Origin: Octopus sinensis
Taxonomy: Eukaryota
NCBI RefSeq assembly: GCF_006345805.1
Contig: NW_021833877.1
Span: 1-64,000, forward strand
Direction of reading: 5' to 3'
DNA length: 64,000 bases
Part shown: in pieces, positions 1 to 58,860 of the stretch
Layout of the letters: every line of letters begins with the position of its first letter
Position numbering within the stretch: the first letter of the stretch is position 1
Program-made: the position numbers and the translations under genes
Notes under the pieces: generated by a model
Databases searched by the model: none
What the model was told of the DNA's origin: nothing
What the model saw: only the letters and a program-made list of their open reading frames with translations

Positions 1-14
1 TTAGACGTGATGTG

Positions 15-395
15 GAGGTGCAATGGCCCAGTGGTTAGAGCAGCGGAATCGCGGTCGTAGGATCGTGATTTCGATTCCTACACCGGGCGTTGTGAGTGTT
101 TATTAAGTGCAAACACCTAAAAGCTCCACGATCTCCGGCAGGGGAGGGTGTGGCGAACCCTGCTGTACTCTTTCACCGCAACTTTCTCTCACTCTTCCTT
201 CCTGTTTCTCTTGTACCTGTATTCCAAAGGGGTCAGTCTTGTCACACTCTGTGTCACGCTGAATCTCCCCGAGAACTACGTTAAGGGTACACGTGTCTGT
301 GGAGTGCTCGGCCACTTGCACGTTAATTTCATGAGCAGGCTGTTCCGTTGATCGGATCAGCTGGAACCCTCGTCGTCACAACCAACGGAATGCCA
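15..395 (+). mobile_element. tRNA-derived SINE (family distinct from the dominant one)
   Basis: A-box TGGCCCAGTGG (24-34) and B-box-like TTCGATTCC (~70-78), followed by a non-tRNA body. A related head lies on the - strand at ~39540-39680. Confidence 0.75.
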
Positions 396-616
396 CGATT
401 GGACATGGCATCCTCAGATATAACGTCAGCAAACTTTTTGTGTGAATCAAGTACCTACTAAACTTAATTATTTCATTATTATCTCTAATATTCCATCTAT
501 TTTTTAACAATATTTTCAAACTCTTTTTTTTATATTTCATTATACACCCTGATACTATCTTTTCATGCGTAGGAAATAAAAAAAAAACGTATATATATTC
601 TTCAGCAGCTTATGAA

Positions 617-1601
617 GTTGGAAAAGGTTTTTCTGGGGTTTTTTTTTTATCTCCTTTGTCAAAATGGAAGGGTTAGTGCCCAAGGCCTTTTGTAGGCCTG
701 CTGTAGGGGAAGAAAGGAAATTAATAGCCCTAATTTATAGGCCTGTCAGGAATGTCAGCAGCTGAGAGGACCCTATTAAAATCATCCAAACACGAGCTGG
801 TACGTTAAACGCAGCGATGTTGTAAGTCTATCACCTGAGTAGAACAAGATGTGAGTTGAACTCAGAACGCAAACTGCCGGGGAAAATACCACAAGCCATT
901 CAGTACAATACACTGATCTTCCCACCAATCTATTCACGTATCCCGGGACTTTATTTTCCGGCCCCTGAAGGTTAAAAAGAAAAAAAGACCTCAGCAGGAA
1001 TTGAACTCGGAATTCAACGATCCGGAATGGATACAGCAAAGCATTTCACCCGACGATCTAACGACAGTGCCGTTTCCCTCTTCGTAAGAGTACGGAGCAA
1101 TGACACATGACACGTTATTTTTACGCGGTCCGCCATTCGGATCTTGAAATTAACTCAATTCCTATGAGAAGATTACGAGTGTGTTCGCCATTGCTTTTCT
1201 GTAATGTCAGAGGAGCAGGCAAGATTTTAGTGTATAATTAATGGTTATTCTTCTCTCTCTAAAATTCCGTACCTAGCCGCAAAATAAAATCCCTGTCAAC
1301 GAGAGTGGACTGGTTGGACGCTCAGGGTATTGTACTGAATGGCTTGTAGTATTTACTCCGGATTTTTGCGTTCTCCGTTCAATTCCCATCTTGTTCTACA
1401 TTGGTGATAGACTTACAACATTGCTGCGTTTCGGTGATTTTAACAGAGTTTAACTCAGCTGCAGGCATTCCTGACAAGCCTTTAATTTAGGGCTAATTAA
1501 TTTCCTTTCTTCCTCACTACAGGCTTTACGGTCCTGTAAAAGGCCTTGGGCTCTAACCCTCCATTTTGACAAAGGAAATTTTTTAAAATACCTTTTCCAA
1601 C
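617..1601. repeat. Inverted repeat pair, arms 617-766 and 1454-1601
   Basis: The left arm gttggaaaagg...ctttgtcaaaatggaagggttagtgcccaaggcctttt...gtcaggaatgtcagcagctgag matches the reverse complement of 1454-1601, with scattered mismatches and indels. Confidence 0.85.
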
Positions 1602-1621
1602 GAGTATATATATATATATAT

Positions 1622-2625
1622 TGCATCAGATACATTTCAACACGCATAGATAAAGAATTTATCATTTATGGGCTGAGATTCATACTTGAAAAGAACTATT
1701 TTACTTTCAACAGTTCGGATTACTGCCACACGTCAGGAACCATGATGGGTACGCAAGTAGCCCCCACATACGCCAACTTAGTCGTGGGATTCAACGAACA
1801 AAAGATCTACAATCAATCTCTTCTATATTCGGTGACACGTTTCATACACAACTCAGAAGCAACTGGAAAAGATACCTAGATGATTGCTTTATCTTACGGC
1901 GGGAAATCATTGACAATCTAACTGAATTTTTTAAAAAGTCAAACAACTTCAGCAATAGCATCGAATTCACAATGGAGTTCAATCCTAAAGAACTCGCTTT
2001 TCTGGATATCCTAATCACCAACAAAGATAGGGAAAAAGAAGCGGACATACTCTACAAACCCACTGACTCCAAACAGCACCGTCTTTTTTACATCATGTCA
2101 CCCGACACACATCAAATTCAACATTCCCTTCAACCTGGCAAAACGAATTTGTACCATAGTATCAGAACCATCCAAACGTGAACAAAGACAAGAAGAACTG
2201 AAGGACACACTTATCCAAAAAGCCTTCGCTCCTGGCATAATCACCAACAGAATAAACAAGGCAAAACAAATGGATGTCAATGAACTTAGGAAAACAAAAA
2301 ACAAAAGAAGGGAAAATGTTTTACCATTCGTGTCAACCTTCAATCCCAGAAACACCGAAATATTTGATCATATCCACAAAAACCTCCCCATTTTATTTGC
2401 AGATGAAAAAATGAGAAAAATCTTAGAAAAACCACAAATGATCAAAAGCAAAGGGCAGTCCAAAACACTAAAACTCATTCTCACTGGAGCAAAAAACGCA
2501 CAAAGAAACCCCCAACCCAACTGTCACAAATGCGGAAGAACAAACGATATCACTTGCCGTTAACTAATTGAGGGACCAGCATTTAAATTCGAAGACGGCC
2601 AAATCTTCATAGTTGAATCCAAATA
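1622..2625 (+). mobile_element. Decayed Penelope-like retroelement: RT core, thumb region and start of the nuclease region
   Basis: Frameshifted translation gives EKNYFTFNSSDYCHTSGTMMGTQVAPTYANLVVG, WKRYLDDCF, LAFLDILI...YKPTDS and LPFVSTFNP...CHKCG, which are typical PLE reverse transcriptase motifs. Confidence 0.85.
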
Positions 2626-2630
2626 CATAT

Positions 2631-2691
<61 letters not shown>

Positions 2692-2738
2692 ATATGTGTG
2701 TGTGTGTGTGTGTGTATGTATATATATATATATATATC

Positions 2739-2769
<31 letters not shown>

Positions 2770-2874
2770 TATACTATATGTATATAATATGTATATATAT
2801 ATATGTATATATAAATATATATATATATAATATATATATATATATATGTATCTATAGTATATATTATGTATGTA

Positions 2875-2906
<32 letters not shown>

Positions 2907-2921
2907 TGTGTGTGTGTGTGT

Positions 2922-2993
<72 letters not shown>

Positions 2994-2994
2994 C

Positions 2995-3042
<48 letters not shown>

Positions 3043-3139
3043 TGATAGATAGGCGGATGCATGGATAGTTCGGGCCTCCACACAGTTTTCGTCAGCCGAA
3101 TGCCAATCACATAGTAATGATCAACCGTAACCTTTGAAA

Positions 3140-3175
<36 letters not shown>

Positions 3176-3772
3176 GAGAGACTTGGCTAATGTTATGTGC
3201 AATGGCATTGAACACTGACCCACCTGGTTACAAAGGAATCTTCTCTGCGTATCACCAAACAGCCTTAACCGTAATCCGTTTTACGTATATATAAATATAC
3301 ATGGCGGTGGAGTTGTAACAGTCTATACGGCTGACGCTGTCCGATATTAATTATGTATTTCCCAACCGGCATTTGACGTAATGTAGTTTACTCGTATGCA
3401 AATATGTTTGGTTTTGGCTATGGAAGTCGAATCAGTCTCACATTGTTTGCGTAACGGAATGTCTGTGTAAGTACGCTCTTCAAATCTCGTGTGTTTGTAG
3501 TTTCTGCATGCGTAATTGTAATCGTCGACAGACTCACACACACACGCAGCTGATTGGTGACGGCGAGTTTACTTGGAGATAAGAAAAGAATTAGGATTGG
3601 TTAACAGTTTCGCCTTGCAGCTTTTGTGATGTAACCGGAGTTAAATTGACATAATTGAGAACTGGAACGTCGTTGCGAAACTCGACTCACTGGAGGCCTT
3701 ACTACCACATGCAGACATACATACATACATATACATATATATATGTGTGTGTAAAGATATTGTTATTAATAA

Positions 3773-3828
<56 letters not shown>

Positions 3829-4086
3829 TAAATAATATATATATAAATATATATACATGCATATATGGGTACAGGACGTCACCATATGTGCAAATAGCAT
3901 GAAATACGCAAACAAACGAGTTAAATACGTAAACAACGAGAAAAAATGGACAACAGAACAAATAAACACAGAGAAAGGGCCCTTCATCAGTTGTCGGCTG
4001 TCTGTCTACTCCTCATTTCGAGCATTCAACGAATATATATATATATAATTATCTATTATATATATATATATATAATATATACATAT

Positions 4087-4166
<80 letters not shown>

Positions 4167-4228
4167 ATGTATGTATGTATTTATATATATGTATATAATA
4201 TAAATACAAAATATATAGATATATATAT

Positions 4229-4620
4229 ACGAGCAAAACGCCCCCATCCAATGGACGGTGCTGATTTGTCAACCATTTAAACCAAATTTTCTCAAAACAA
4301 CTTGTCTGACCATCCCATAGGCCTCCCCTTTGAGAAACAGTGATTTAACCTAAATTTGAGACACCGTGCATTTTTTTTCGCGTACGCGTAGTATCGATCG
4401 CAATAGCCGATGTACTTGCGCCTACAAATGCACGTTCCCTCGGCTTTATCGATCACATTCTCAGCTGGAATCGATTTTTGTAAGTTTTTCAAGACTTATA
4501 CACGCTCTGATACCGTCGGTATCTACATATCAAATTTGAGCGCAATCGGATGGAGGATGCCCGAGATCCTAGAAGACACACACAGAGACAGACAGAACGG
4601 ATTTTATATAATATATAAAG
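4229..4620 (+). mobile_element. Non-autonomous rolling-circle-like (Helitron/Helentron-type) element
   Basis: Ends in caaatttgagcgcaatcggatg...acagacagaacggattttatata, resembling the acag-microsatellite 3' ends of non-autonomous Helitron-type families. It sits next to a TA array. Class assigned by resemblance only. Confidence 0.4.
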
Positions 4621-4835
4621 GGCAAAAGAAAAAAATTCTGTACCAATATGCTGAGAAATAGACTTTAAATCGTCAATCACCACATACAATATACATCTCA
4701 ATATACACGTGTGCTGAGACTCGTTACGGAATTTTATATTTAGATATATCTGGGATACTTATGTGTAATCATGACATTTGCTTCTCTTTTTTTTCCTTGG
4801 TTGCTTGTAAGTATTTCATTTATTTCTTATCGTAT

Positions 4836-4894
4836 TCTCTGCTGATGAGGGGAAAATCCGTTGGATTAATCCCGAAATTGATTCAATATAGAGA
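4836..4894 (+). ncRNA. Type I hammerhead ribozyme motif
   Basis: Stem I tctctg (4836-41)/tagaga (4889-94). Core CUGAUGA 4842-48. Stem II gggg/tccc extended by aatcc/ggatt. GAAA 4874-77. Stem III attg/caat with a 3-nt loop. NUH triplet AUA 4886-88. Confidence 0.75.
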
Positions 4895-5173
4895 TAACAT
4901 ATTTAATAAAAAAATTCCATTAGCTTGCTTTCCTCGATTTCAGTGAAACGTGTATTCATAGAGATGTATATTGTAGGTGGGATTTGCACTCCGACCTCGT
5001 AAACCCTTGCCAGCAACGACTACCCAAAACAGACCCCCACCCATGAGTTGGAGGGTTGTCACCTGTGTGGTACAAAGGTGTTATCCACCATGAATAGAGA
5101 ACCGCCGATAAATGGTGATTGCAGCGACGCACTGTTACAGCGCAATCCCCCATACCACTACTACAACTACTAT

Positions 5174-5218
<45 letters not shown>

Positions 5219-5430
5219 CATCGCCACTACTACTACCACTACCGCCATTACTACTACTATTAATACTACCACCACCACTACTACTACTACCAACACTAAC
5301 TACTATACTACTACTACCACTACTACTACCACCACCACCACTACTATCACTACCGCCACTACTACTACTATTAATACTATCACCACCACCACTACTTCTA
5401 CTACCACCACTATTACTACTACCACTACCG

Positions 5431-5473
<43 letters not shown>

Positions 5474-5581
5474 AATATAGTATAATAATCATGTAGAATG
5501 TCATACATATTACCTACAGTGCTACCCGGAGTGACTTTGAAAACTCACTTGGGCAATATCAGAAAATACGGTGTACATACC

Positions 5582-5616
<35 letters not shown>

Positions 5617-6218
5617 TTATCTTTTATGAAATTTGCCATTCTCTTTGCCTTGTTTTTCTTTCCCTTGTTCTCCTCTTCGTTTCCTTTTCTTGTTTATTTC
5701 TTCCATTTTCTAATGTAATTTTGCAATTACATAAAAACCATTAATTCAAAGAAAAATCTTTATATATACGTTTGAATGGCGATCGTTTCCATTGATAATT
5801 TGGTCTAAGCATTGTAAACAGGATCGCCTTGTTTAGAGATGTTATAAAAACTCGTTAGATTTGTTTTTATTGTTAATAAAACACTAATTCAATTTAAATG
5901 AATAGAGAGAAAAAGAAGTGAAAAAGTATAAAATGTTTACCGTGTTAGATTTTTTTTCCTGCTCTTTCGTTTTAGTATTCGACGTTTGAAATGTCTTACA
6001 TGCGTCTATCACAATCGTATCGGCTGCACTTAAAATCACGTGACACTTCCTCTCATTCCTTCTGCCGTCTGCTACACCTAACTGTTACTCTAACCGCATA
6101 GAAATACTCTGGAACTTGTCAGCAAAATTCTAAACACGGTGTTTTCTTACTTGGAAAATATATTATAAAAGGGTAATTAGGTCAGTTTAATTAATCTTAG
6201 TAATCATGGATAGTATTT

Positions 6219-6637
6219 GTTATTTCTTTACGACCCACAAGGGGCTAAACACAGAGGGGACAAATAAGGACAGACAAATGGATTAAGTCGATTACATCGA
6301 CTCCAGTGCGTAACTGGTACTTAATTTATCGACCCCGAAAGGATGAAAGGCAAAGTTGACCTCGGCGGAATTTGAACTCAGAACGTAACGGCAGACGAAA
6401 TACCTTTTTGTTTACTACCCACAAGGGGCTAAACACAGAGGGGACAAACAAGGACAGACAAACGGATTAAGTCGATTATATCGACCCCAGTGCGTAACTG
6501 GTACTTAATTTATCGATCCCGAAAGGATGAAAGGCAAAGTCGACCTCGGCGGAGTTTGAACTCAGAACGTAACGGCAGACGAAATACCGCTAAGCATTTC
6601 GCCCAGCGTGCTAACGTTTCTGCCAGCTCGCCGCCTT
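6219..6637 (-). mobile_element. Dominant tRNA-derived SINE with internally duplicated body
   Basis: Head ggcggcgagctggcagaa, B-box gagttcaaa(c/t)tcc, core gcctttcatcctttcggggtcgataaattaagtaccag and tail gtaaagaaata. Flanked by a 14-nt TSD catgg(a/g)tagtattt (6205-18 and 6638-51). Confidence 0.9.
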
Positions 6638-6702
6638 CATGGGTAGTATTTACACGCTTGTCATGTAGTCAAGAAATTTTTTTAAAAAATGAATGTAAAT
6701 TG

Positions 6703-7133
6703 ACCGGAAGTGACGAAAGTAACATCCCGTAATTTCATAAAGAGTAAAGAGGATATACAGAGAACTGGTGAAACCCACCGAATTTTATTAACAAAAATTC
6801 CTCATTATGGAGCTTTGCTGTACTTCCGTGACTGTTATGTCTTCCCATAAATATGATTGTCTTCATCTTAAAAGAGTGTGTGTCTCTGTGTGTGTATGTG
6901 TGTATACGAGGGGTGTATAAAAAGTCTTGAGCCTCAAAAAAACAAAACATAGTATAAGACTTCAGACGAAGGTACAAGACTTCAAGGCCTTGAAGGTTCA
7001 AAACTTTTCATACACCCCTCATATGTGTTTGCGCGGTTTTCCAGTTGTATAAAATATATGGACGTTCGATTCATTGGTTAAATTACAAATTGTTTACATA
7101 AAATTATCGGATTTCACTTTCATCACTTCCGGT
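6703..7133. mobile_element. MITE-like element with ~33-bp imperfect terminal inverted repeats
   Basis: Left end accggaagtgacgaaagtaacatcccgtaattt versus reverse complement of the right end accggaagtgatgaaagtgaaatccgataattt. No clear TSD. Confidence 0.55.
6907..7021. mobile_element. Tc1/mariner-derived MITE nested in the larger TIR element
   Basis: TA|cgaggggtgtataaaaagt ... acttttcatacacccctca|TA. Mariner-like TIRs with a TA target duplication. Confidence 0.8.
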
Positions 7134-7428
7134 GAAGTTCGTTTCATTATTTTGAACTGCTAAACTGTATGTTAACTGATACCATGAGTTTACTGTCAGA
7201 TATACTCATTAGATTATTTTTGTATTATATGAAATAGAATACCCACATATCGATTAATCCCCAAGATTTGAATATTGACTTTTATCAGATAATTTGTATA
7301 GAAATAAATAAATATACGATAAATAAGACCCCAAAGTACTATGTGTAGATGCATATAACTATTATTATATAATAGTTAAGAACACGGGTTACTAACCCCA
7401 AGATTCCGAGTTTGAGTCCAGGCAGTGA

Positions 7429-7521
<93 letters not shown>

Positions 7522-7523
<2 letters not shown>

Positions 7524-7680
7524 TAGAAAATTACCTTAGGAATGGGAACCCAGGTTCGAAATTTCCTCAAGACACCTGAAGGCTGGAGAGTATATCAGCC
7601 GAAACGTTGTGTTAACAACAAACAAGATGAGGACAAATATCCGTCAAATGTAAACAATGTAAATAATGTAAATAAAAGAA
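7522..7680 (+). mobile_element. Penelope-like terminal repeat fragment with a degenerate minimal hammerhead (7571-7613)
   Basis: Stem I gacac/gtgtt, stem II ggctg/cagcc and GAAACGTT are present, but the core reads CUGAA instead of CUGANGA. Confidence 0.55.
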
Positions 7681-7686
7681 AGTGCA

Positions 7687-7731
<45 letters not shown>

Positions 7732-8486
7732 GTGTGTATGTGTGTGTGGTGTGTGTGGTGTGTGTGTGAAATCATCCGTCTGTTTATTTGCTTCCTAGCA
7801 ACGAACCGCAACGAAACCCAAACTTTACAACACATAACCCAAAAGGCACAACTCAGACCATACGACCGAACAATCCAGTCCGTAAATACGTAACGCGAAG
7901 CCAACGCCAAACTGAGCAAACCGAAACCCAAACCAAACACCATACAGGTACCCGATTCACCTAACGTACACTTAACTCCGAAAGGGTGATCTGTATTAGA
8001 ATGGCGACAACCCACCTCCTAAATGTTAGCATCTACACATCTCCAAATCATCCTCAACAATACATCTTATATATTAGCAACAACCCAACTCCCTCACGTT
8101 AGCAACAACTCATATCCAATGCATTAGCAACGACCCAGCTATATCTATCAACACAGAAAACCAAAATCAATAGAAACAGATTAGGTTCAATTATTCCCAC
8201 CCATTTCCTACGATGTCTGTATTCTCTTCATTTAACTCTGTTGCTGCCAATTCCAGCGTAAAACTTCTCTTTATCTACACAAATTCCCCGCTTCTCTACG
8301 GCTGATATCATAAAGGGACATTTGATTTAAGATATCAGAATGTCGCCGTCTAACCCGGCTTCCCAATTAGACTCACACATGCACACACACACACACACAC
8401 ACACACGTGTATTTTACATTCTTACATATATACACACAGTCACATATACACACACACAAACACACACACATATATATATACGGATA

Positions 8487-8523
<37 letters not shown>

Positions 8524-9344
8524 TATATATATATATATATATATATATACTTATAGTTATAAAAATAGATACATATATATATATATATATACATACGTAT
8601 ACACATACACACGTTCATCTTACATTCTTACATATATACACACAGACGCAGACACACACACATATATGATATATGTATATCTATATCTACATCTCTCTCT
8701 CTCTCTCTCTATTATATATAATATATATATATATATATTATATATATATACATATATATATATATACCTATAGATTATATATAGATATATAGATATATAT
8801 ACCTATAGATATATAAATAGATATAGATATATATACCTATAGATATATAAATAGATACATACACATACATACATATACATACATACATATATACATATGT
8901 ATATATATATACACACAAACATATATATATAAATACACATACGTGCTCACATATATATATATACATATGCATACAAGCGTGCAAACATACATGACATACG
9001 TACATAGACACACATATATATTCGTTTACACTGAGGCACACACATGACATTTAATCGATCTGTTTGTATATTGAAATGAAAACTCGAATCACATTGGCTT
9101 GAAATTCGAATCAAATTCAATACGGAATTCTGAGAGAACGAACCGAGTACTGAAGGGAAAGGGTGTTACTTTAGACATTTTTGTATAAGTACTAATGTGT
9201 ATTTAAGGAGATCGTGTCGCACTCACATTAGGTGAAACACGCTGACTGACAGGTGACGGTCGTTTAGAAAAAGCGCGCGCTAAAACTACGCGCCTTCACT
9301 AGTCAGTTAAGGTGAGACAGTGTCATGTGACAACTTGCTGGAGC

Positions 9345-9620
9345 TGCCTACTGGAGCCTATGCGGCAGGTATTTAAAGGGAAAAATTTTGACAAGACAGT
9401 CAGTCACCGGCTGACACTCGCTGACGATACATCGAATAGGCCAGGGAACAGAAGAAAGAAGAAAGAAGACATGCACCCAACACCAGAGCTGAACACACCT
9501 CCGAAAGGGGGGACCCCGCCACGTCAAAACGGTAGAGGAGTAGGGGCCGAAACTGGACGTAGTTCCTCCTGATGATGTCTTGAGCTAACTGGATCCAATA
9601 AAGGAGCTGTTGTGGTAGCA
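9345..9620 (+). repeat. Interspersed repeat (LTR- or pLTR-like); inverted homolog at ~33460-33730
   Basis: Blocks ggtagaggagtaggggccgaaa, ctgatgatgtctt, ggatcc(a/t)ataaaggagctgttg and tatttaaaggg are shared with the reverse complement of 33460-33730. Confidence 0.7.
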
Positions 9621-10587
9621 GACCACGAAACACGGTTGTAATACCCCAGGCACGTCCACCGGGGAATACATTAGACGATGTCGTATACTATAGGCTAGCA
9701 TTGACAAATACGTTGTGCGTGGAATTTGCTAGAATGTAAACCTCTATATTCTTTTCTACTCTAGGTACAAGGCCCGAAATTTTGGGAGAGGGGGCAAGTG
9801 GTACTTAATCTATTAACCCCGAAAGGATGAAAGGCAAAGTCGACCTCGACGGAATTTGAACTCAGAACGTAAAAACCTCTGTATTGCTTTCGGTTTTGTT
9901 TGTATAGTGACTATTAAGGGACTCGTGCAGTGTCCAACCATTTCAGACCTGTGGGCTTGTGCCGAACGGCTGCTGTCACGTGTGGGACGAGTCCGCCTGC
10001 CGGCCGAGTCTATCGTGATAATTGCAAGGCAAGGCAGTTTTCATCGTACTGGTGGCCATGGTGAAAGAATGTGTGTGGTGGACTCGAGCGAAAGGATTAG
10101 AGACAAACACTTACCTCTCTGGCCAATCGCTCATCAACTTTTTCAAGTACCATTGAAAAGAAAGGTGAGAATGGAGAGGCAGGTTTTGTCTCGTGAAAGT
10201 TTCAAAAAAAAGGTGGGTGAATGTATCAAAGATGGTGTGTGCGAGTGACGAAACCACTTTGAGCATGATCCTGTAAATCGTAAAAGAGAGAGAGAGAACA
10301 CTTTGCTTTCATATGTTTATTTCCTCCCTGTCTGAGGTTACCGTGGTCTTTTCCGTAGGCTTTTCTTCCCACGGATGAACCTAATCTTGTTTCTTACTTT
10401 AAAAAAAAAATTGTTTCTGTGATACATGATCCCTTTTGATCGCCTTTTTACCCCCGATCCCTTTTCATCGGAATTTTACATTTGTTTCCTTTTTGGTTCC
10501 TTTTTTCTTTTCCCATCTTCGAAAAGAAAAGCTCTACATTTGCATTTGTCCCCTCTGTATTCAGCCCCGTGTGGCCAATAAAGAAAG

Positions 10588-10671
<84 letters not shown>

Positions 10672-10672
10672 A

Positions 10673-10726
<54 letters not shown>

Positions 10727-10899
10727 ACTACATATCAGCAAGGAAAGTCCAAATATATAGCTTACTCTTAAATTTGGGTTTTATCGTAAATCCCTTCACA
10801 CAAAGTACGAGATCAAATGCACAGAGTACGGATAAGCGTGTAAACTTCCGGTGTGGTATGAACCTTACTGCAAAAATTGCCGCATGCTGACCTCACTTT

Positions 10900-11400
10900 A
10901 GTGGGAAGCTCTCCCTAGGCTATAATTTATGAAGAAAAATTTATTTAACTTTCAGCATCGAGGGAAGTTTTCTAAACTTCCGTTTGGATGAGTGAATTCA
11001 AAAGATGATTTAATATAAAATACTTCTCAGTAGTTAGCCTATATATACTAGTTTTTATGGTAAATATGTGGTATATTCTGCTCTATAATTTTCCAATTGA
11101 TTTTGAACTTGTCATTCAGCTTCCATATATAGCTGGAAAATGCTGTAACAATTCTCTTCTGGAGTTTTTTCTTTTCCTTTTTCTTTTTTGAGGACTTGTC
11201 ATTATTGAGACAGTGCTTCTTAAATCTTCCATCGTGTCTGTAATACAACTCAGTATTACAAATCTGACTGAGCTGAGCAAAATGCGAAGATGAAAGTGTA
11301 TGTTACTTATAATTATAATATATTATGTTGAGTATGCGGCAATATGGCATATTTTTGTAACTAGACACGATTGGAGAAGATCTACATGACACCAGTGCAC
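10900..11400 (-). mobile_element. Penelope-like GIY-YIG endonuclease 3' remnant
   Basis: The minus-strand ORF includes TAFSSYIWKLNDKFKINWKII, followed by a TTEKYFILNH-like segment. This fits the PLE nuclease C-terminus (T.LS.YIW.L...I.W.I...C.LC..EK..I). Confidence 0.65.
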
Positions 11401-11734
11401 AGTGACTAATTAACTGTCAGAAGACAGGTTAAAAATTGGACTTAACTGAAATCAAAATAAATGGCAATCTTGTATATAAAAGTATCATATCTGTTGCTTG
11501 GTTCGATAATGCTTTAAGAGTGTTTTCATGAGATGGCAACTCGGAGGTTTGCAGAAAAAATAAAGAACATTTTCTCCGATCTAATGAGATCGAAATAGAC
11601 ATATTTGGTGCTGCCAACGTCGGAGACAACAGGGATAAAAATTTTCCCAAGCATGAGAATTAAATTATGCTTGTTTAAAAAAACAAAAACATTAATTCTT
11701 AATTTCTTAAAATTATCTCTCCTTTTCTTCGTAG

Positions 11735-11784
11735 GTCGCTAACAATTCCCGATCGGTTTTAGCTTCCTTTCGCCAACTAAATGG
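11735..11784 (+). CDS. Prop1: Prop-family gene, start-codon exon: 50 nt, mostly 5'UTR, coding part is only ATGG (11781-11784)
   Basis: Pyrimidine tract tctctccttttcttcgtAG (AG 11733-34) and donor GTAATT at 11785. The ATG has A at -3 and G at +4. The phase-1 end joins the phase-1 start of the homeobox exon to give ATG G|GT CAA GAG = [11 protein letters not shown]. No transcript evidence is available. Confidence 0.65.
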
Positions 11785-12325
11785 GTAATTTGAATTCATT
11801 AAAAGTATTTTGTGTACCTCGTTCAGTACATAACATCTCACTGACCTGCATGCTATTGGCTTAGTTAAGTTATTCCCCTTAGCTCGCTATAGTTTAATAT
11901 ATGTACGTATATATAGAGAAATACATACAGAATTAGCTTTGAGATTTGGGCGACATTTCTTTCCAAGATAATCTCATTAAAATGGTTGCCACTGTAATCG
12001 CTGTTGCTTTTAATCCTTGTTGTATGTTACTATCCAGTATATTTTTGTTTAATATTTATCTTTGTCACACAGATTTGCATAAAACTGCATAATTTTACAT
12101 ACGTTATAATTCCACAATGTTACAAAACAACTTTTTCGTTAAGAAATTTTATGAGACCCATTATGTTCAGTTTCAAACAGATATTAAATATATATATATA
12201 TGTTTTTTCAACATATACATGACCATGTGTATGCGCGCGTGTAAGTGTGTATACATGTAATAAAACAGATGGGATAAACGGTACTAAAAATATGAGTATG
12301 TATATATATATAAAACATAATAGCA

Positions 12326-12388
<63 letters not shown>

Positions 12389-12392
<4 letters not shown>

Positions 12393-12748
12393 AATAAGAA
12401 AATGGAGGGGATAAATAGGTGGTATTCATCAACTTTTAGACATTATATTATGTCAATTTATGTATTTACTAAGAGGGCAATTATAACAATATACATACAT
12501 GTATAACATATTTTGCTTTACATATATAACATATAAAATATAAAAATATCACTAATTATTAAAATATATAAAGTAGAGCATCGGTATTTTTATATTTTAT
12601 ATGTTATATATGTAAAGCAAAATATGTTATACATGTATATATAATGTTATATTTGTCCTTTTAGTAAATACATAAATAAATTGACATAATATAATGTCTA
12701 AAAGTTGATGAATATCACCTATTGATTCCCTCCATTTTCTTATTGCTC
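12389..12748. mobile_element. Foldback/MITE-like palindrome, ~160-bp arms and ~32-nt spacer, in intron 1
   Basis: gagcaataagaaaatggaggg...tataaaaatatc (12389-12550) matches the reverse complement of 12583-12748. The right flank is TA and the left flank is (TA)n(GA)n. Confidence 0.88.
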
Positions 12749-12922
12749 TATAAATTAGGGGTAAAATAACTCTTTACTTTCACCCATTTAGTACACTTGG
12801 TAATGTAATTGCGATGCAATGAAAAAACACTTGTGTATTAATAATTGGGTATTCTACCAGCAGTATATTGGATAGATATTATCCCTTAGGCGGTTGGATT
12901 CACAACCTCTAACTCTCTTGGA

Positions 12923-12970
<48 letters not shown>

Positions 12971-12971
12971 C

Positions 12972-13029
<58 letters not shown>

Positions 13030-14643
13030 TGTGTGTGTGTTGTAATGACAATAATAATCGTTGGATGGAATTTATAAATATTTTAATGCATCGCTACGTG
13101 CGTTTCCACAAATCACACGTTTCTTAGGATCATAGTCCGTATTCCTGGGATGGTTACATTGTAGTCCGTATTATCCGTGGGCATCGGGTGGATCATCTTC
13201 ATGGATTGATTTCTTCAGGTGAAATAGCAGTAATGAATGTTTAACAGTGGTGGTGGTGGTGGTGGTGGGGTTGTTTATTCCTTTTGTCCAGTGAGAAAGT
13301 CGATTGAGTTACGTAGGTATTTCTGTGTGTATTTGGTGTGGAGGAGGAGAAGATGAGGGAAAAATAGGAAGGAACGATAATTATATGGCAATGAACGTGT
13401 GTGTGGTGATGTTGGACGTATTTCGCTGTTCATTCAGCAGATGTCAAGGATGAGTAATACATTCCTTTGTTCGGACTAACTTCAATGAAGTCTGAAGCAA
13501 AAGGGTCAATAGGTCAGCCACTCCAGCCACTCCAGCCACCAGCTGTTGGAGTTCATTGTCTGAATTGATAAATGATACTTTCTTAGGGTGACCTTTTAAT
13601 TATTTCTGGTGGCACAATAGTATACTGTATAGCACCCTAAACATTAGCTGATTTGTTTGTTTGTTTGTTTGTGTTCCTTCCTTGTTCTATAATATGCTAT
13701 GGGCATATTATCCTACATTACATCCGTACAGCTCGATACAACCCGAAATCACTGGTCCACAAGTCAGCATCATTAAATTGTGGCTGGCATAATGGAATAG
13801 GAACTTTATTTGCATATCCCAAATGTTTCCCGTAAACAAATTAAAAAAATAAATGCTTGAAATACGAGACTAGAAAAACAGACAACAACTGATGAAGGGT
13901 CGTTATGTTGTTTGTTTTGTTTTCCATTTGTGTCTTTCGTTGTTCGAAAGAATAGTTCATGTTCCATTTACTCTTGCTTCGTACTTTTTTGGAGTACACG
14001 TTTCATGACGTCCTGTGCCCACATATGCATATAGATATATATATAGATATATTATATATATAGATATATTAATATACGTATAGATTATGTACATATACGT
14101 ATGTATATATGCATATATATATCATATATATATATATATAATTATATATATATATATATATAGATATATTATATTTATATTTATATATATACTTACATAC
14201 ATACACACATACATACATACACACACACACACACGTATCTATATTTCCCAGCATGAAACCTCGGCATGCAATGCACTCCATACGATAGAAAAGAATAGAT
14301 ACAAACATTAGATTTTAGTTTAATCGAAATCATTCAATGTCGCCGAGAAACATCTTGGAAGAAAATCCAGCACGCTATCCGCAACCTACTTCAATTACGT
14401 GGGTTTCATGTTTAATATTGTACACTGTGGCTTCTAGAATAGGACTTACCTCCTCACGTACGTACAAATACACACGTATATCTATGAATGTTCTTATACA
14501 CACATGTGCTCATGCACGCGTGTATATGCCTTGTGTGTCAATTATACTGATGTCTAATTCTATTGCTGTGATGTACGTGTTTTGTTGACTTGTGCTTGTG
14601 TGTGTGTGTGTGTGTGTGTCTGTGTGTGTGTCTGTGTGTGTGT

Positions 14644-14690
<47 letters not shown>

Positions 14691-14823
14691 TGTGTGTGAA
14701 AATTCTATTTCCTCGCGGCTCGAGTTTCCCGAGACTGCGATCATCAGGTGTAAAGTTTTTTACTGTACGCGATATGTATTGAGTTATCTCTCCTCTTCTC
14801 GCTCTACTTCTCTACTCTTCTTC

Positions 14824-14879
<56 letters not shown>

Positions 14880-15715
14880 ATCTCTATCTCACTGTTTCTC
14901 TCTGTACGTTTCCCTCTGCCTCCTTATAGCAACCTTGTCTCTTTTTCTGTCCCCTCTGCTTTTCTCTAATTTTGCTTCTGAACACACACACAGATAAAAA
15001 CATGCATATATATATATATATATACAAGAACTGTTATGAACGTGGGATCAAAGAAGGGGCAGAAAGGTGGCACCAGACAGTACAACACGATGGCGTCTGC
15101 TTTGAATGCTTGGCGGCCTTTGTTGTAACTTGACGAACAAAAGCAACGAAGTTACCAAACCTTTTGACTCAGCACAATACTAAGAGACACAGTATGAGTC
15201 TGTGTGTGTGTGTGTGTGTGTGTGTCTGAGACATAGTGAAAGAGAGAGGGGGAAAGAAAAAGCAGTGATTCTAATAAGCATATCTTCTCATACATGCTTA
15301 CATTTGATTTAGAAGGAAGCCGTATGTTTTGGTATATAAGGAACTTTTCCAAAAACAAAAATTATCAAAAGAAAAAAAAATTTCCCTCGACTATACGCCG
15401 TTGAACTGGCATGCGTCTAATGTACCCGGGTGTCGTTAATGTGATCAAATACGGTATTTCTCTGTAAGACAGAGGTTGTAAGGGAGATTACACAGGTACA
15501 CGGGAGTATCTATAAGTGTCAAGTTTTGTTTAGCGAATAATTCGGATTTAGATCAATGTAACAACATCATTAATAATGATCTGTCTTAGGAGTTCATTTA
15601 TGGTCACCCTATCTGCTAGAAATAGTAGCCGAATCTCTCTTAAATTTCACTGTTCATTTAAAAAGGAAAGAAAACCCATAGTGGACAATATTAGTCCCAT
15701 ATTACAACCACCACC

Positions 15716-15748
<33 letters not shown>

Positions 15749-15905
15749 TACTACTACAACTACTACTGCTAGAATAATTCACTGGCTGCAACAACAATAA
15801 CAAGAATACCATTTAAAACTAATTATTAAAACTAATTATTAAAACGTAAAATAACTAATACTTCTTCGTCCCCTAAATTATTAACTTCTCCTCAATTTAT
15901 TTCAG

Positions 15906-16189
15906 GTCAAGAGGGAGCCTTCAAAAAATTGAAGACTGAAGGTGGCACAGTGAGCAGCGGAAGTACCGTGAGCAGTATGGGAACAAGTTCAGGTCTAGGT
16001 AGTGGAGTACAGCACGGTAGTGCTACAACGGGCACATGTCCAACACCGGCCCGACGGAGGCACCGGACGACCTTCACACAAGAACAGCTACAAGAACTAG
16101 AGGCAGCCTTTGCCAAAAGCCATTATCCGGATATCTATTGCAGAGAGGAATTAGCAAGAATCACAAAACTAAACGAAGCCCGTATACAG
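15906..16189 (+). CDS. Prop1: Prop-family homeobox exon, N-terminus through homeodomain residue 46
   Basis: Acceptor tttatttcAG (15904-05) and donor GTAATA at 16190. Encodes [46 protein letters not shown] (homeodomain starts at 16052). This closely matches my recollection of the C. elegans UNC-42 and Drosophila CG32532 homeodomains. The intron lies at the typical PRD-class position 46/47. Confidence 0.96.
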
Positions 16190-16210
16190 GTAATATCATT
16201 CTTTTTAATT

Positions 16211-17043: not shown

Positions 17044-17832
17044 CAAAATAATGGTGAAAAACGTATACAGCAACTGACGAAAATTATGTCTTTAGTCACA
17101 AGATCTGTCTTCATTATTTTTTATGTGGGACCTGGTGCTTTCCAGATGAAATCTTTTCTGTTGGTGCTGTTGATTATCCAAGCGGTTGGTATCCTCAGCC
17201 AAACCGGAGAACAGGAGGGACGAGTGTGGAGACTGTTCGGTATCTTATGATCAAGATATGAATAGACCTTACTGGGATGATTTTCTTTACTATTTTACAC
17301 GCACACAAGCTGTCTCATGATTCAACAAATTCCGATAATCCCCAGTACTCAGTTACTCCTTGTTACTCATACTAACTGAAATACTTCATCAGACGCAGAA
17401 ACGTAGTTACTCTGAGTAAATGAGTTCAGGCTGAGTATATGGTAATGGCGCTAATATGAAGCTAAATGCAGTCACGGGATCGTTGCTGCCTGACTGGTTG
17501 CTCTGAGCAGCACTACATACACGCGTCTTTACATTGGCCAAACCGGATCAACTAAAAGAACTGAGATAAAAGCTATTTGAAATCAAAGGAAAAAAAACAA
17601 TTTATGGCTAATTTAATTAGAATGGCAACGACTCTCTATATTTTAAGTTCAATCCCTGCCGAGGTCAACTTTGCAGGTCATCTGTCCGGGGTATATAAAA
17701 CAATACAGTACAATATTTACAAATACATATATATACGTATACAAATATATAACTGAATATGTATATCTAGATATATGTAATATATATGAATACATACATG
17801 TATATATATACAATATATTTATGAATACACAA

Positions 17833-40835: not shown

Positions 40836-40970
40836 AAAGGATTTTTATTATTGTTATTGTTGTTGTTGCTGTTGTTGTTGTTGTTGTTATCATGATAATC
40901 CTCCTCACAACCTTCATTATAATACTCGTCCTCCTCATCATGATCATCATTATCGTCGTTTATCCAACAG

Positions 40971-41267
40971 GTCTGGTTCCAGAACAGAAGAGCGAAATAT
41001 CGCAAACAAGAAAAACAGCTAGCGAAATCTTTGTCGCCTGTCATTCCAGCCTGTAACGGCATGATGCGGAATATATACCCAACCTCAACTCGAACCTACG
41101 CCTACCCAACACCATCCAGTGTTAACACAATGACACGTTACCCTCAGATGAACACTGCTTACCCCCCTGTCGCTCAGTTTTCACCCATGAGCAGTATGCA
41201 AACCACCAATATGACAACAGTCCCAAGACAAGTTCAACAGTTCCCTATGACATCCGACTATAACCTG
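40971..41267 (+). CDS. Prop1: Prop-family exon: recognition helix (Q50) plus Pro/Ser/Thr/Met-rich region
   Basis: Acceptor ccaacAG (40969-70). Phase-0 start VWFQNRRAKYRKQEKQLAKSLSPVIP completes the homeodomain split at 16189. Open for 99 codons to ...TSDYNL, then donor GTAACT at 41268. Confidence 0.95.
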
Positions 41268-42653: not shown

Positions 42654-43118
42654 ATATAATTAGTGAATGGAAGAAATGGAGTTGAACGAAGATTGTACAG
42701 AATTCCTTTTATTACATTCTACACATGTTTCAAAGGCCACAATTTTCCAAATTCTGATTAAATAAGGATACCATTTGCAGCTTTCTCTTCAGGAAAAACC
42801 AGGAATTACGTTGTCAGAACAAAACAAAAAAAGGCGCAGCAAAGCAATTCGAACGAGGACGCTCCTTAAGAGCCCATGGGTAAAAATCTTTTACCCATGG
42901 GCTCTTAAGGAGCGTCCTCGTTCGAATTGCTTTGCTGCGCCTTTGTTTGTGTTTGTTCTGACAACGTAATTCCTGGTTTTTCCTGAAGAGAAAGCTGCAA
43001 TATGGTATCCTTATTTAATCAAATTTGGAAAAGTGTGGCCTTTGAAACATGTGTAGAAGGTAATAAAAGGAATTCTGTACAATCTTCGTTCAACTCCATT
43101 TCTTCCATTCCTAATTAT

Positions 43119-44701: not shown

Positions 44702-44807
44702 GCTGTTGTTATTATTATTGTTATTGTTATTACTATTATGATTATTAATATTATAAAATTTTCTCACTTCATTTCGTTTCGCTTCATTTTAGTACGTTTC
44801 GTTTCAG

Positions 44808-44909
44808 GAGAATCACGAAGATGATTGGTACAACAAAAGTCTGACTGCACTGCGCATGAACAACACGCACCCGAGTTTGTCGAACCCAGTACTCCAATAC
44901 CAAGCCTAG
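44808..44909 (+). CDS. Prop1: Prop-family terminal coding exon ENHEDDWYNKSLTALRMNNTHPSLSNPVLQYQA*
   Basis: Pyrimidine tract ending tttcgtttcAG (44806-07), phase 0 matching the upstream donor. Non-repetitive, protein-like sequence embedded in repeats, with TAG at 44907-09. Total CDS is 687 nt, divisible by 3. Confidence 0.8.
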   Translation, partial: ENHEDDWYNKSLTALRMNNTHPSLSNPVLQYQA

Positions 44910-57049: not shown

Positions 57050-58860
57050 CATACCTATTAAGAAGGCTCTTTCTGACAGGTACCGACTAGATTTTCTTAA
57101 TGTGCAAGTATGGACATGGTCCAACCGCATTTATTTATGTGCGTTCTTTATGAGGCTAGCAGACAGGAATAGTGCAGGTGTCCACAATTCTAAATAGCCG
57201 ACCACACAGACCACAAATCTAAGATCTGCACGGTTGACTTAGAACTCATAGACTGAAGCTGAATGGTTACTGGAAGCGGAACGAATCAATCCCAACATGC
57301 AAAGCTTCGGAGAGTTCATTAGTGAATTAGGTAGGTGGCGATCGATAGGTGAAACTGCCAACAAGTGATGGTGGATTACCTTAAACGTGGGATTAGAGTT
57401 GTCTTAATAATGTTTAGTAAAGAAGTAGAGACAGAGAAAAATAGAAAGCGATTTAGTCTGAATCTTGGAAGAGATGACAAGTAAAGATATCAAAAACGAC
57501 GCGCTAGCAGCGAAAATGGGCCTCTGCCATCTCTTCTACATGGTGCATGTAGGGTGCATATTTAGAGTTAAGTTGCATGCTGCAAGGTTCAAAGGAATGA
57601 AAGTCGTTCAATGTGCCCGTGTGGCAGAGGTCGAAGGTGACAGCAACGCCATAATTCAGTTTTGATGGGGAAGAACGAGCGCTTACTATTCGATTTGAAA
57701 CAACTGTACAGAGTTTTTCAATGGCACTCTGCTCGAAGTGAATGGCAGATCAGAAACAGCGGTGAATTTAAATGCCTACCTCGAAAATCTGTGGCTGGGG
57801 GTGCGAATTGTTGCAGAAGGTTGATAACAACAGCTGAAATACGGGAAACGATAAGTGGCCGTCAAAGATGCAGATTATCTGGTCTAGATAATGTCCTTTG
57901 GTACTTTATGCGTACATATTAGAACTGTTCGGCGATATGTTGATAGCAGGTGGCAGCAATTGGCAGCAGGACAGAATTCTCATTCTGTGAATAGAGGAGT
58001 GTTGACCCTGCTATAAAAGAAAGTGAACAAGGAGGATTTTGTTGACAATTTGAATGTAGAGTTTTAAGATTTTGGCTAAAGTGTTAGCAAAGAGATTGTC
58101 GTTGGTGCTTTGCTCATAAAAACGGATAACCTGCCCGTAATGGTGACGAACACCATAGATATCGGAAAAGTGGGCAGCATCTAAAGGAATAGGATGCAGT
58201 AACAGGACTTAAAATTAACCACAAGTCAGTGGGCTTTCAGCTTAACACCTAGAGGGGAAAATATACGCAATCCAATAACGTCCTGGGATGCTCGACAAGC
58301 GGCCATGTTAAATTTCTTTGGATTCGATTCGGGCCAAATCTTCAGTTGGATAGAAAATGGGAAGAGTTCATGAGCTGATAGCCAATCATACCCAAAAATG
58401 GACAAAGAGGAAGCTATCTTCTTCTGGCCAGGCAGAAGTAGCAATTGTGTATACTGCCTTGTATGACCGTCATGTCCTACTCCAAATTTCATCTGACCGA
58501 ACTGGAGCGGCTACTCTTTCGCTTCGTGTGGAGAGGATGCGTTCTACGAATATAACAGTTCATCTTCTATAAGCTCCCTCTGCAAGAAGGACTGAGTCAG
58601 CAGTGGCTGATGATGAGAAGCTGTGTCCTAAGGCTGCAACTGCTACAAATATCCCTAGATTGTGAACAGGTGTGGTCGCCCTTTCTCAAGTACGATTCTC
58701 TCAGCTCGTCTCTTTGGCAGTGTCGCAATCTTGGGCCAAGTGAAGATCAAAACCGGGCGACTGGCATCTGAAATTTTGTTAATTCTCCCAGCCTTCTATG
58801 AGTTGGGCAGTGCCAAAGGTGGAACGTCTAGAGGACTAGTGGTAGAGAAGAGCCTATAAA
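57050..58860 (+). mobile_element. Decayed L1/Tx1-like LINE fragment A
   Basis: DRYRLDFLNVQVWTWSN (APE region), LITTAEIRETISG...SGLDNV, KINHKSVGFQLNT, KWTKRKLSSSGQAEVA and LERLLFRFVWRG. The RT core is largely deleted. Confidence 0.8.

What the first reader, a model, noticed from the sequence alone, without database searches (positions are those of the whole stretch)
4836..4894. Apparently intact hammerhead ribozyme ~7 kb upstream of the Prop start exon, on the sense strand
All catalytic-core nucleotides (CUGAUGA, GAAA, NUH = AUA) and three pairable stems are present. Type I hammerheads are known from Penelope terminal repeats and retrozymes, and Penelope remnants occur at 1622-2625 and 10900-11400. 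If an upstream 5' exon or a read-through transcript spans this site, the RNA could self-cleave after 4888. That functional link is inference.
Basis: partly seen in the sequence, partly recalled or inferred. Interest (0 to 1): 0.7.

Follow-up and report, generated by a model that had tools for sequence, protein, structure and literature searches.

The report
Hammerhead ribozyme in an octopus retroelement
The 59-base motif is a well-formed self-cleaving hammerhead RNA carried by a small mobile-element family of octopus genomes, sitting as a lone copy inside a long intron of a homeobox gene; it is a new example of a known kind of element, not a new kind of biology.

Summary
The motif at 4836-4894 (+) is there exactly as described. 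It has the full hammerhead core, helix I of 6 bp, helix II of 4 bp + AA/AA internal loop + 5 bp, helix III of 4 bp, and cleavage after A4888. Chance gives about 0.001 such motifs per 64-kb window but tens per octopus genome. No Rfam hammerhead model hits it, so the motif alone does not decide.

The deciding evidence came from the orthologous Octopus vulgaris locus; the window itself is O. sinensis contig VCDQ01002032.1. That locus holds a second hammerhead with the same architecture and spacing. Of its 19 base pairs, 7 changed on both sides and none is broken. It lies in a ~305-bp AT-rich segment missing from the matching O. sinensis site. That segment's arm and tail are also homologous to sequence beside the candidate (E about 1e-8).

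Both ~320-nt elements fold far more stably than shuffles. The candidate is therefore most likely a solo copy of a retrozyme-like, non-autonomous hammerhead element. It lies on the sense strand in intron 1 of the Prop/unc-42-like gene, not 7 kb upstream of a start exon. Catalysis, transcription and genome-wide copy number are untested, and a host function is unlikely.

The parts
4836..4894 (+). Type I hammerhead ribozyme motif. Helix I is 4836-4841/4889-4894, the core is CUGAUGA 4842-4848 and GAAA 4874-4877, and the cleavage site is 3' of A4888.
   Evidence: CM R1 82.2 bits; aligned 1:1 with the O. vulgaris copy
4849..4873 (+). Extended helix II: GGGG/UCCC (4 bp), AA/AA internal loop (4853-4854, 4868-4869), AAUCC/GGAUU (5 bp), loop GUU.
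   Evidence: Same layout in the O. vulgaris copy. All four A's of the internal loop are invariant while both flanking helices covary.
4877..4888 (+). Helix III (A4877-U4887, U-A, U-A, G-C; triloop AUU) and H17 = A4888.
   Evidence: one compensatory pair, U-A to C-G
4675..4710 (+). 5' arm of an inverted repeat that encloses the hammerhead domain.
   Evidence: Self-BLAST gives 38 bp at 87% against 4948-4984. It forms the long closing helix of the 331-nt fold, z = -7.0.
4948..4984 (+). 3' arm of the inverted repeat, 54 nt after the hammerhead. The O. vulgaris element has its 3' arm in the equivalent position.
4601..4709 (-). Segment homologous, in inverted orientation, to the 3' arm plus tail (positions 133-239) of the O. 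vulgaris hammerhead element.
   Evidence: 70% identity over 114 nt; E = 1e-10 pairwise and 2.6e-8 against all held sequence
14040..14095 (.). Empty site in O. sinensis, TA-rich. At the orthologous place O. vulgaris carries the ~305-bp hammerhead element (L001 ~7850-8157, hammerhead at 8075-8134 on the minus strand).
1637..2626 (+). Context: decayed Penelope-like element RT remnant, the kind of autonomous element thought to mobilise such hammerhead elements. It ends at a (TA)n tract.
   Evidence: Homologues carry PF00078 RVT_1, PF26215 HTH_animal and PF01541 GIY-YIG; tblastn map
15902..16192 (+). Context: first in-window coding exon of the Prop/unc-42-like homeobox gene. Further exons lie at 40968-41267 and 44793-44906.
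   Evidence: tblastn with P0001/P0121 at 99-100% identity; homologue names

Best explanation
The motif is a genuine type I hammerhead. It belongs to an Octopus family of about 300-nt, AT-rich, strongly self-paired non-autonomous retroelements, retrozyme-like and probably mobilised by Penelope-like elements into TA-rich tracts. In that family the ribozyme would cut element transcripts to unit length, leaving 5'-OH and 2',3'-cyclic-phosphate ends that can be ligated into a circle and reverse-transcribed. The copy in the window is a solo, rearranged insertion in the sense strand of intron 1 of the Prop/unc-42-like gene.

With only one ribozyme it can make at most one cut, after A4888, in an intron of the long pre-mRNA isoforms, and this is most likely without consequence for the host.

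Shown: the motif, a second homologous copy with preserved structure, flank homology, a filled/empty site between sibling species, and stable folds. Inferred: catalysis, the circular-RNA life cycle, the Penelope-like element as the mobilising partner, and transcription through the site.
For: 1. All core nucleotides and three helices are present.
2. The local chance expectation is about 0.001 per window.
3. A descriptor scan of 112 kb of other octopod DNA found one more motif, in O. vulgaris at L001 8075-8134 (-). It has the same spacing: helix I 6 bp, helix II 4 bp + AA/AA + 5 bp, helix III 4 bp + triloop, AUA site, and G.U at 1.1-2.1.
4. On the 1:1 alignment, 19/19 pairs hold in both copies. 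Seven pairs changed on both sides, three on one side, none is broken. The register-slide controls collapse to 24-50% paired.
5. The features my descriptor did not demand are shared: equal lengths, the AA/AA loop, the distal helix, and UAA 3' of helix I. I estimate this as order 1e-9 by chance (own arithmetic).
6. Independent flank homology: the O. vulgaris arm plus tail matches window 4709-4601, E = 2.6e-8.
7. The O. vulgaris copy lies in a ~305-bp segment absent from the orthologous O. sinensis site within a TA tract.
8. Both elements are about 31% GC and fold with z = -6.3 and -7.0. This matches the published description of metazoan non-LTR retrozymes: 170-400 nt, low GC, highly self-paired, type I hammerhead, found in molluscs (PMC7229834).
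9. A PLE RT remnant lies 2.2 kb upstream. PLEs favour microsatellite targets (PMC8557442).
Against: - Only two family members were seen, because no octopus genome could be searched, so copy number and consensus are unknown.
- No tandem copies occur at either locus, so the defining retrozyme arrangement is not met here.
- No Rfam hammerhead hit for either copy, even at E<=10.
- The hammerhead fold is 3.1 kcal/mol above the MFE for the candidate and 6.4 kcal/mol above it for the O. vulgaris copy. In the candidate a 10-bp alternative hairpin (4861-4870/4877-4886; my own base-pairing by eye, not a tool output) competes with helix III.
- Both copies were found with a descriptor that requires pairing, so 'no broken pair' is partly by construction.
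- The filled/empty site could be a deletion in O. sinensis between TA tracts rather than an insertion in O. vulgaris.
- No similarity to the flanks of the PLE copies examined.
- Catalysis and expression are untested.
Confidence: 0.75

Rival explanations
1. Chance motif. An AT-rich 2-3 Gb genome holds tens of sequences that satisfy a hammerhead descriptor, and this is one of them, with no evolutionary or catalytic meaning.
For: Simulations predict tens per genome. There is no Rfam hit. The fold z-score of the 63-nt motif is ordinary at -0.93. The hammerhead fold is not the MFE.
Against: A second copy with identical architecture and non-required shared features was found within 112 kb of other octopod DNA, where about 0.002 is expected. 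Flank homology has E = 2.6e-8.
Confidence: 0.05
2. It is the terminal-repeat (pLTR) hammerhead of the Penelope-like element whose RT remnant lies at 1637-2626. It would serve to process tandem PLE transcripts.
For: It is on the same strand as, and downstream of, the PLE remnant. PLE hammerheads lie near the 3' end in pLTRs (PMC4209133, PMC8557442). A related PLE in L009 has a minimal hammerhead-like motif 96 nt after its ORF stop.
Against: The motif is 2.2 kb beyond the end of the remnant, with microsatellites and unrelated sequence between. The window has no direct repeat of the region. PLE hammerheads are minimal, with no helix III or 1-2 bp and a palindromic loop, whereas this one has a 4-bp helix III and a 25-nt helix II. 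The O. vulgaris copy sits in a 305-bp unit with no ORF. No similarity to the flanks of four octopod PLE loci.
Confidence: 0.1
3. A domesticated intronic ribozyme, like the amniote HH9/HH10 intronic hammerheads. It would be kept by the host to cut Prop/unc-42 pre-mRNA and tune the long isoforms.
For: It is on the sense strand inside intron 1, the core is intact, and an O. vulgaris gene model runs through the neighbouring region on the same strand.
Against: It lies within a repeat-family copy. Orthologous conservation could not be examined. The other family copy in the same intron is antisense and present in only one of two sibling species. There is no HH9/HH10 hit.
Confidence: 0.03
4. A relic: a true family member by descent whose ribozyme no longer cleaves, because of misfolding into the competing hairpin or the lack of the tertiary contacts needed at physiological Mg2+.
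For: The alternative folds are more stable than the hammerhead fold. The copy is rearranged, with an inverted arm plus tail and 125 nt of unrelated sequence before the hammerhead. In Xenopus, 8 of 9 predicted retrozyme dimers did not cleave in vitro (bioRxiv 10.64898/2026.07.22.740005).
Against: No core or helix position is damaged. All 19 pairs are intact.
Confidence: 0.3

Closest known systems
Metazoan non-LTR retrozymes (Cervera & de la Pena 2020, PMC7229834)
   Same: Type I hammerhead inside a 170-400-nt, low-GC, highly self-paired non-coding unit. They occur in molluscs, have species-specific sequences, and coexist with Penelope-like elements.
   Different: The described retrozymes are tandem arrays that yield circular RNAs, whereas both copies here are solo. 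Here helix II is 25-26 nt with an internal loop instead of 4 bp plus a hairpin loop. No expression data are available.
Penelope-like element pLTR minimal hammerheads (Cervera & de la Pena 2014, PMC4209133)
   Same: Type I topology, association with retroelements, and frequent occurrence as single dispersed motifs near microsatellites.
   Different: Those lack helix III or have 1-2 bp with a palindromic loop, are thought to act as dimers, and lie in repeats flanking an RT-EN ORF. This one has a 4-bp helix III and is not in such a repeat.
Schistosoma Sm-alpha SINE-like hammerhead (reviewed in PMC6155905)
   Same: An active type I hammerhead carried by a short, dispersed, non-autonomous retroelement of an invertebrate.
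   Different: No tRNA-like part or sequence similarity was seen here. The loop-loop contacts are of another form.
Intronic hammerheads HH9/HH10 of amniotes (reviewed in PMC6155905; Rfam RF02275, RF02277 named from my own knowledge)
   Same: A sense-strand hammerhead inside an intron of a protein-coding gene.
   Different: Those are single-copy and conserved at orthologous sites. This one is a repeat-family copy with untested orthology and no Rfam match.
Rfam Hammerhead_1 (RF00163); 235 loci reported in the giant squid genome (PMC6962438)
   Same: The same ribozyme class and topology, in a cephalopod.
   Different: Neither octopus copy scores with any Rfam hammerhead model, even at E<=10.

Membership tests
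Hammerhead ribozyme, type I | Conserved core: C3 U4 G5 A6 N7 G8 A9, G12 A13 A14, A15.1-U16.1, H17 (not G) | tested here: met
   CUGAUGA 4842-4848, GAAA 4874-4877, U4887, A4888; G10.1-C11.1 present
Hammerhead ribozyme, type I | Three helices around the core, with helix I open and helices II and III capped | tested here: met
   6 bp / 4+5 bp / 4 bp; 100% of cells paired in both copies
Hammerhead ribozyme, type I | Helices supported by compensatory change among homologues | tested here: met
   7 of 19 pairs changed on both sides and none is broken; 2/500 shuffles reach this value; the register-slide controls fail. Caveat: only 2 sequences, both found with a pairing descriptor.
Hammerhead ribozyme, type I | Match to a curated covariance model (Rfam hammerhead families) | tested here: not met
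   No hit at gathering score or at E<=10 for either copy. The long helix II is the likely cause (inference).
Hammerhead ribozyme, type I | Loop 1 / loop 2 tertiary contacts needed for fast cleavage in vivo | tested here: inconclusive
   There is no hairpin loop 2. An invariant AA/AA internal loop after 4 bp of helix II, and an invariant UAA after 6 bp of helix I, sit at the canonical distances. That they make the contact is inference.
Hammerhead ribozyme, type I | Site-specific self-cleavage giving 5'-OH and 2',3'-cyclic phosphate ends | not testable with these tools
   Needs in vitro transcription and RNA-end mapping.
Metazoan non-LTR retrozyme | Short (about 170-400 bp), low-GC unit carrying a type I hammerhead | tested here: met
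   The O. vulgaris unit is ~305 bp at 30.6% GC; window 4601-4995 is 31.4% GC.
Metazoan non-LTR retrozyme | Tandem arrangement (dimers to multimers) allowing excision of unit-length RNA | tested here: not met
   Both loci hold single copies, with no direct repeat of the region. Solo monomers are reported for Xenopus retrozymes.
Metazoan non-LTR retrozyme | Highly self-paired RNA | tested here: met
   MFE -95.5 and -81.7 kcal/mol, z = -7.0 and -6.3; 0 of 100 shuffles fold as well.
Metazoan non-LTR retrozyme | Many dispersed copies per genome; abundant circular RNA | not testable with these tools
   No octopus genome or transcriptome could be searched. Two copies were seen in about 155 kb of Octopus DNA.
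Penelope-like element pLTR hammerhead | Lies in a direct repeat flanking an RT-(GIY-YIG) ORF | tested here: not met
   The nearest PLE remnant ends at 2626. There is no repeat of 4270-5150 in the window and no similarity to PLE loci L003, L004, L005, L008, L009.
Penelope-like element pLTR hammerhead | Minimal architecture: helix III absent or 1-2 bp with a palindromic loop | tested here: not met
   Helix III is 4 bp with a non-palindromic AUU loop; definition from PMC4209133.
Conserved intronic hammerhead (HH9/HH10-like) | Conservation at the orthologous intronic site across species | not testable with these tools
   O. vulgaris locus L001 starts at window ~5963, 1.1 kb short of the site. O. 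bimaculoides DNA was not returned because the gene range is too long.

The most novel reading that the evidence does not exclude
The family is a currently mobile octopus retrozyme that makes about 300-nt circular RNAs. This sense-strand copy actually cuts Prop/unc-42 pre-mRNA in intron 1, so a mobile ribozyme modulates the long isoforms of a neural homeobox gene.
Probability: 0.05. Interest if true: 0.7.

Novelty: new member of a known kind. Interest (0 to 1): 0.38.

Why it matters
- It adds cephalopods to the animals that carry hammerhead-bearing non-autonomous retroelements.
- The hammerhead variant has a long helix II with a conserved A-rich internal loop, and the Rfam models miss it. Rfam-based counts in cephalopod genomes, such as the 235 loci reported in giant squid, may therefore understate hammerhead content.
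- A filled/empty site between O. vulgaris and O. sinensis hints at recent mobility.
- For the host gene it most likely matters little, since this is a solo copy deep in a very long intron.

Tried and rejected
1. Rfam at gathering score and at permissive E-values, on the window, on the motif and on the O. vulgaris copy, gave no hammerhead hit.

2. I searched the 5.8-billion-protein collection with a concatenate of all six-frame ORFs around the motif, hoping to find ORFs called on orthologous or paralogous contigs. There were no hits.

3. Fetching the orthologous site failed. P0001 and P0122 are not on record. The O. bimaculoides gene range is too long for DNA to be returned. The O. vulgaris locus stops 1.1 kb short.

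4. A pattern scan of metagenome contigs for the family's helix II signature gave two hits. Both are bacterial peptide deformylase coding sequence, so they are chance matches.

5. Covariance model R1, run with filters off over the window, L001, L003-L005, L008 and L009, found no further member. The 20.9-bit hit at 14075-14134 is a TA microsatellite.

6. Pfam did not classify the PLE remnant directly. Homologue domains did.

7. A MITE reading of the inverted arms is rejected. In the O. vulgaris unit the 3' arm is internal (positions 131-156 of 317), and arm plus tail are contiguous in both copies.

8. Weak hammerhead-like hits at 42717-42795, 42978-43060, 58270-58351, 17099-17201 and L005 39-85 are rejected. 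They have a 2-3 bp helix II with very long loops, or mismatched helices.

Full report
**Origin of the window.** The window is Octopus sinensis contig VCDQ01002032.1, positions 1-64000. Locus L002, fetched through the O. sinensis Prop-like protein P0123, is identical to window 5906-54909 over all 49,004 bases.

The gene is a paired-like homeobox gene named 'prophet of Pit-1-like / unc-42'. Its coding exons in the window lie at 15902-16192, 40968-41267 and 44793-44906 on the + strand.

The first coding exon (MQTLAKAH...) is not in the window. The O. sinensis model is 5'-partial, and the O. bimaculoides model spans 118 kb. The finding therefore lies in intron 1 of the long isoforms, on the sense strand, 11.0 kb upstream of the first in-window coding exon. 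It is not 7 kb upstream of a start exon. That the site is intronic is an inference from those gene models.

**The observation.** The sequence at 4836-4894 reads UCUCUG-CUGAUGA-GGGG AA AAUCC GUU GGAUU AA UCCC-GAAA-UUG AUU CAA-U-A-UAGAGA.
- Every invariant hammerhead position is present: C3 U4 G5 A6 U7 G8 A9, G10.1-C11.1, G12 A13 A14, A15.1-U16.1, A17.
- Helix I has 6 bp, helix II has 4 bp + a 2x2 AA/AA loop + 5 bp, and helix III has 4 bp with a triloop.
- The scissile bond follows 4888.
- My descriptor scan finds it as the only hit of that quality on either strand.

**Is it more than chance?** Two 50-Mb Markov simulations with the window's composition gave 1 and 0 hits at >=5/4/4 bp. This is roughly 0.001 per 64-kb window and tens per 2.3-Gb genome. 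In a genome-wide scan the motif alone is therefore not decisive.

No Rfam hammerhead family matches at gathering score or at E<=10 on 301 nt or 87 nt. The 63-nt fold is not unusually stable, with z = -0.93. The hammerhead fold (-10.6 kcal/mol) lies above the MFE (-13.7).

**A second copy.** I fetched the orthologous O. vulgaris locus (L001), two O. bimaculoides loci and two Argonauta loci carrying Penelope-like ORFs, and one unidentified eukaryote PLE locus. The descriptor scan of the first 112 kb gave exactly one more motif, at L001 8075-8134 on the minus strand: UUAUCG-CUGACGA-AGGG AA GGUUC UUAC GAACU AA CCCU-GAAA-UCG GUC CGA-U-A-UGGUAA.

It aligns to the candidate column for column with a single 1-nt loop indel.
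- All 19 pairs hold in both copies.
- Seven pairs differ on both sides, three on one side, and none is broken.
- Sliding the 3' partners by 1-3 columns drops pairing to 24-50%.

Both copies were found with a descriptor that demands pairing, so 'none broken' is partly built in. The descriptor did not demand the following, and the copies share them:
- identical helix II and helix III lengths;
- four invariant A's of the internal loop;
- a paired distal helix II;
- the AUA site;
- G.U at 1.1-2.1;
- UAA directly 3' of helix I.

I estimate this coincidence at order 1e-9 (own arithmetic from base frequencies). A covariance model built from the two (R1) scores 82 and 85 bits on them. With filters off it finds nothing else credible in the window or the other loci.

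**Homology beyond the ribozyme.** The O. vulgaris hammerhead sits in a ~305-bp segment (L001 ~7850-8157, 30.6% GC). That segment is missing from the orthologous O. sinensis site, window ~14040-14095, inside a TA-rich tract. The flanks on both sides align well.

The segment has a 24-26-nt inverted arm on each side of the hammerhead domain and a ~165-nt tail. Its 3' arm plus tail (positions 133-239) match window 4709-4601 in inverted orientation: 70% over 114 nt, E = 1e-10 pairwise and 2.6e-8 against all held sequence.

The candidate is likewise enclosed by inverted arms at 4675-4710 and 4948-4984. Both ~320-nt stretches fold far better than shuffles, with z = -7.0 and -6.3. The two loci therefore hold diverged members of one repeat family whose ribozyme structure has been kept. 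The filled/empty difference between sibling species suggests recent mobility. A deletion between TA tracts in O. sinensis cannot be excluded without an outgroup.

**What kind of element.** The features fit the published description of metazoan non-LTR retrozymes. Those are 170-400-nt, low-GC, highly self-paired units with a type I hammerhead. They are species-specific in sequence, known from mussels, and coexist with Penelope-like elements (PMC7229834). [quoted passage not shown] The defining tandem arrangement is not met at either locus here.

**The Penelope link.**
- A Penelope-like RT remnant does lie at 1637-2626 (+). Its homologues carry RVT_1, HTH_animal and GIY-YIG domains.
- The candidate is not that element's own terminal-repeat ribozyme. 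It is 2.2 kb away and not in a direct repeat. PLE hammerheads are minimal, with helix III absent or 1-2 bp and a palindromic loop (PMC4209133).
- A related PLE in L009 shows such a minimal hammerhead-like motif 96 nt after its ORF stop.

**Mechanism and limits.** In a retrozyme life cycle the hammerhead trims multimeric transcripts to unit length, and the ends are ligated to a circle that is reverse-transcribed. This rests on established knowledge of the family, not on anything shown here.

A solo copy can only make one cut. Here that cut would be after A4888 in an intron of the long Prop/unc-42 pre-mRNA, whenever that isoform is transcribed. An O. vulgaris gene model on the same strand runs through the adjacent region, which weakly supports transcription.

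Whether this copy cleaves is open. Its core and helices are intact, but more stable competing folds exist, the copy is rearranged, and many predicted retrozyme ribozymes fail in vitro. A host function is unlikely.

**Novelty.** The held literature contains no description of hammerhead elements in Octopus. The giant squid genome paper reports 235 Rfam Hammerhead_1 loci. This is a new member of a known kind, and its helix II form escapes the Rfam models.

**Dead ends.**
- A protein-space search with ORFs spanning the site gave nothing.
- The metagenome pattern hits are peptide deformylase genes.
- The orthologous site in O. vulgaris and O. bimaculoides could not be reached.

Noticed in passing
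window 14040-14095; L001 7846-8162: O. vulgaris carries a ~305-bp hammerhead-bearing element on the minus strand here, and O. sinensis lacks it. This is a filled/empty site inside a TA microsatellite in the same intron.
   Followed up: yes
window 6223-6404 and 6407-6588; also 934-1017, 9789-9872: A ~184-bp SINE-like unit is tandemly duplicated (95%), with further copies in the window and more than ten copies in the O. vulgaris locus.
   Followed up: no
   Followed up: partly
window 12456-12548 / 12585-12677: A 93-nt inverted repeat, 95% complementary with a 36-nt spacer. It is also present and duplicated in O. vulgaris. It may be a hairpin-forming repeat or a MITE.
   Followed up: no
window 807-962 / 1276-1431: A 156-nt inverted repeat, 82% complementary, lies just upstream of the PLE remnant. 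Inverted truncated copies next to PLEs are described in the literature.
   Followed up: no
window 5105-5514: A long imperfect trinucleotide array (ACC/ACT/ATT-type, period 9-12) starts about 120 bp after the element's 3' arm.
   Followed up: no
window 42717-42795 (-) and 42978-43060 (+): An inverted pair of a repeat, each with a weak CUGAAGA...GAAA hammerhead-like match. Helix II is only 3 bp with a ~50-nt loop, so I judge it not credible.
   Followed up: partly
L009 11584-11620 (+) and 9206-9242 (-): An unidentified eukaryote PLE has identical minimal hammerhead-like motifs (ACUUUC CUGAAGA .. GAAA CAUG UA GAAAGU). One lies 96 nt after the RT ORF stop and the other in an inverted copy, followed by (TA)n.
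   Followed up: partly
window 1-15901 (gene context): The first coding exon of the Prop/unc-42-like gene lies outside the contig. The O. bimaculoides model spans 118 kb, so intron 1 is very long.
   Followed up: partly
L001 1-32344 (+): The O. vulgaris annotation has a second gene model (108-aa product) that starts upstream of the locus and overlaps the Prop gene on the same strand. Its sequence could not be obtained.
   Followed up: no
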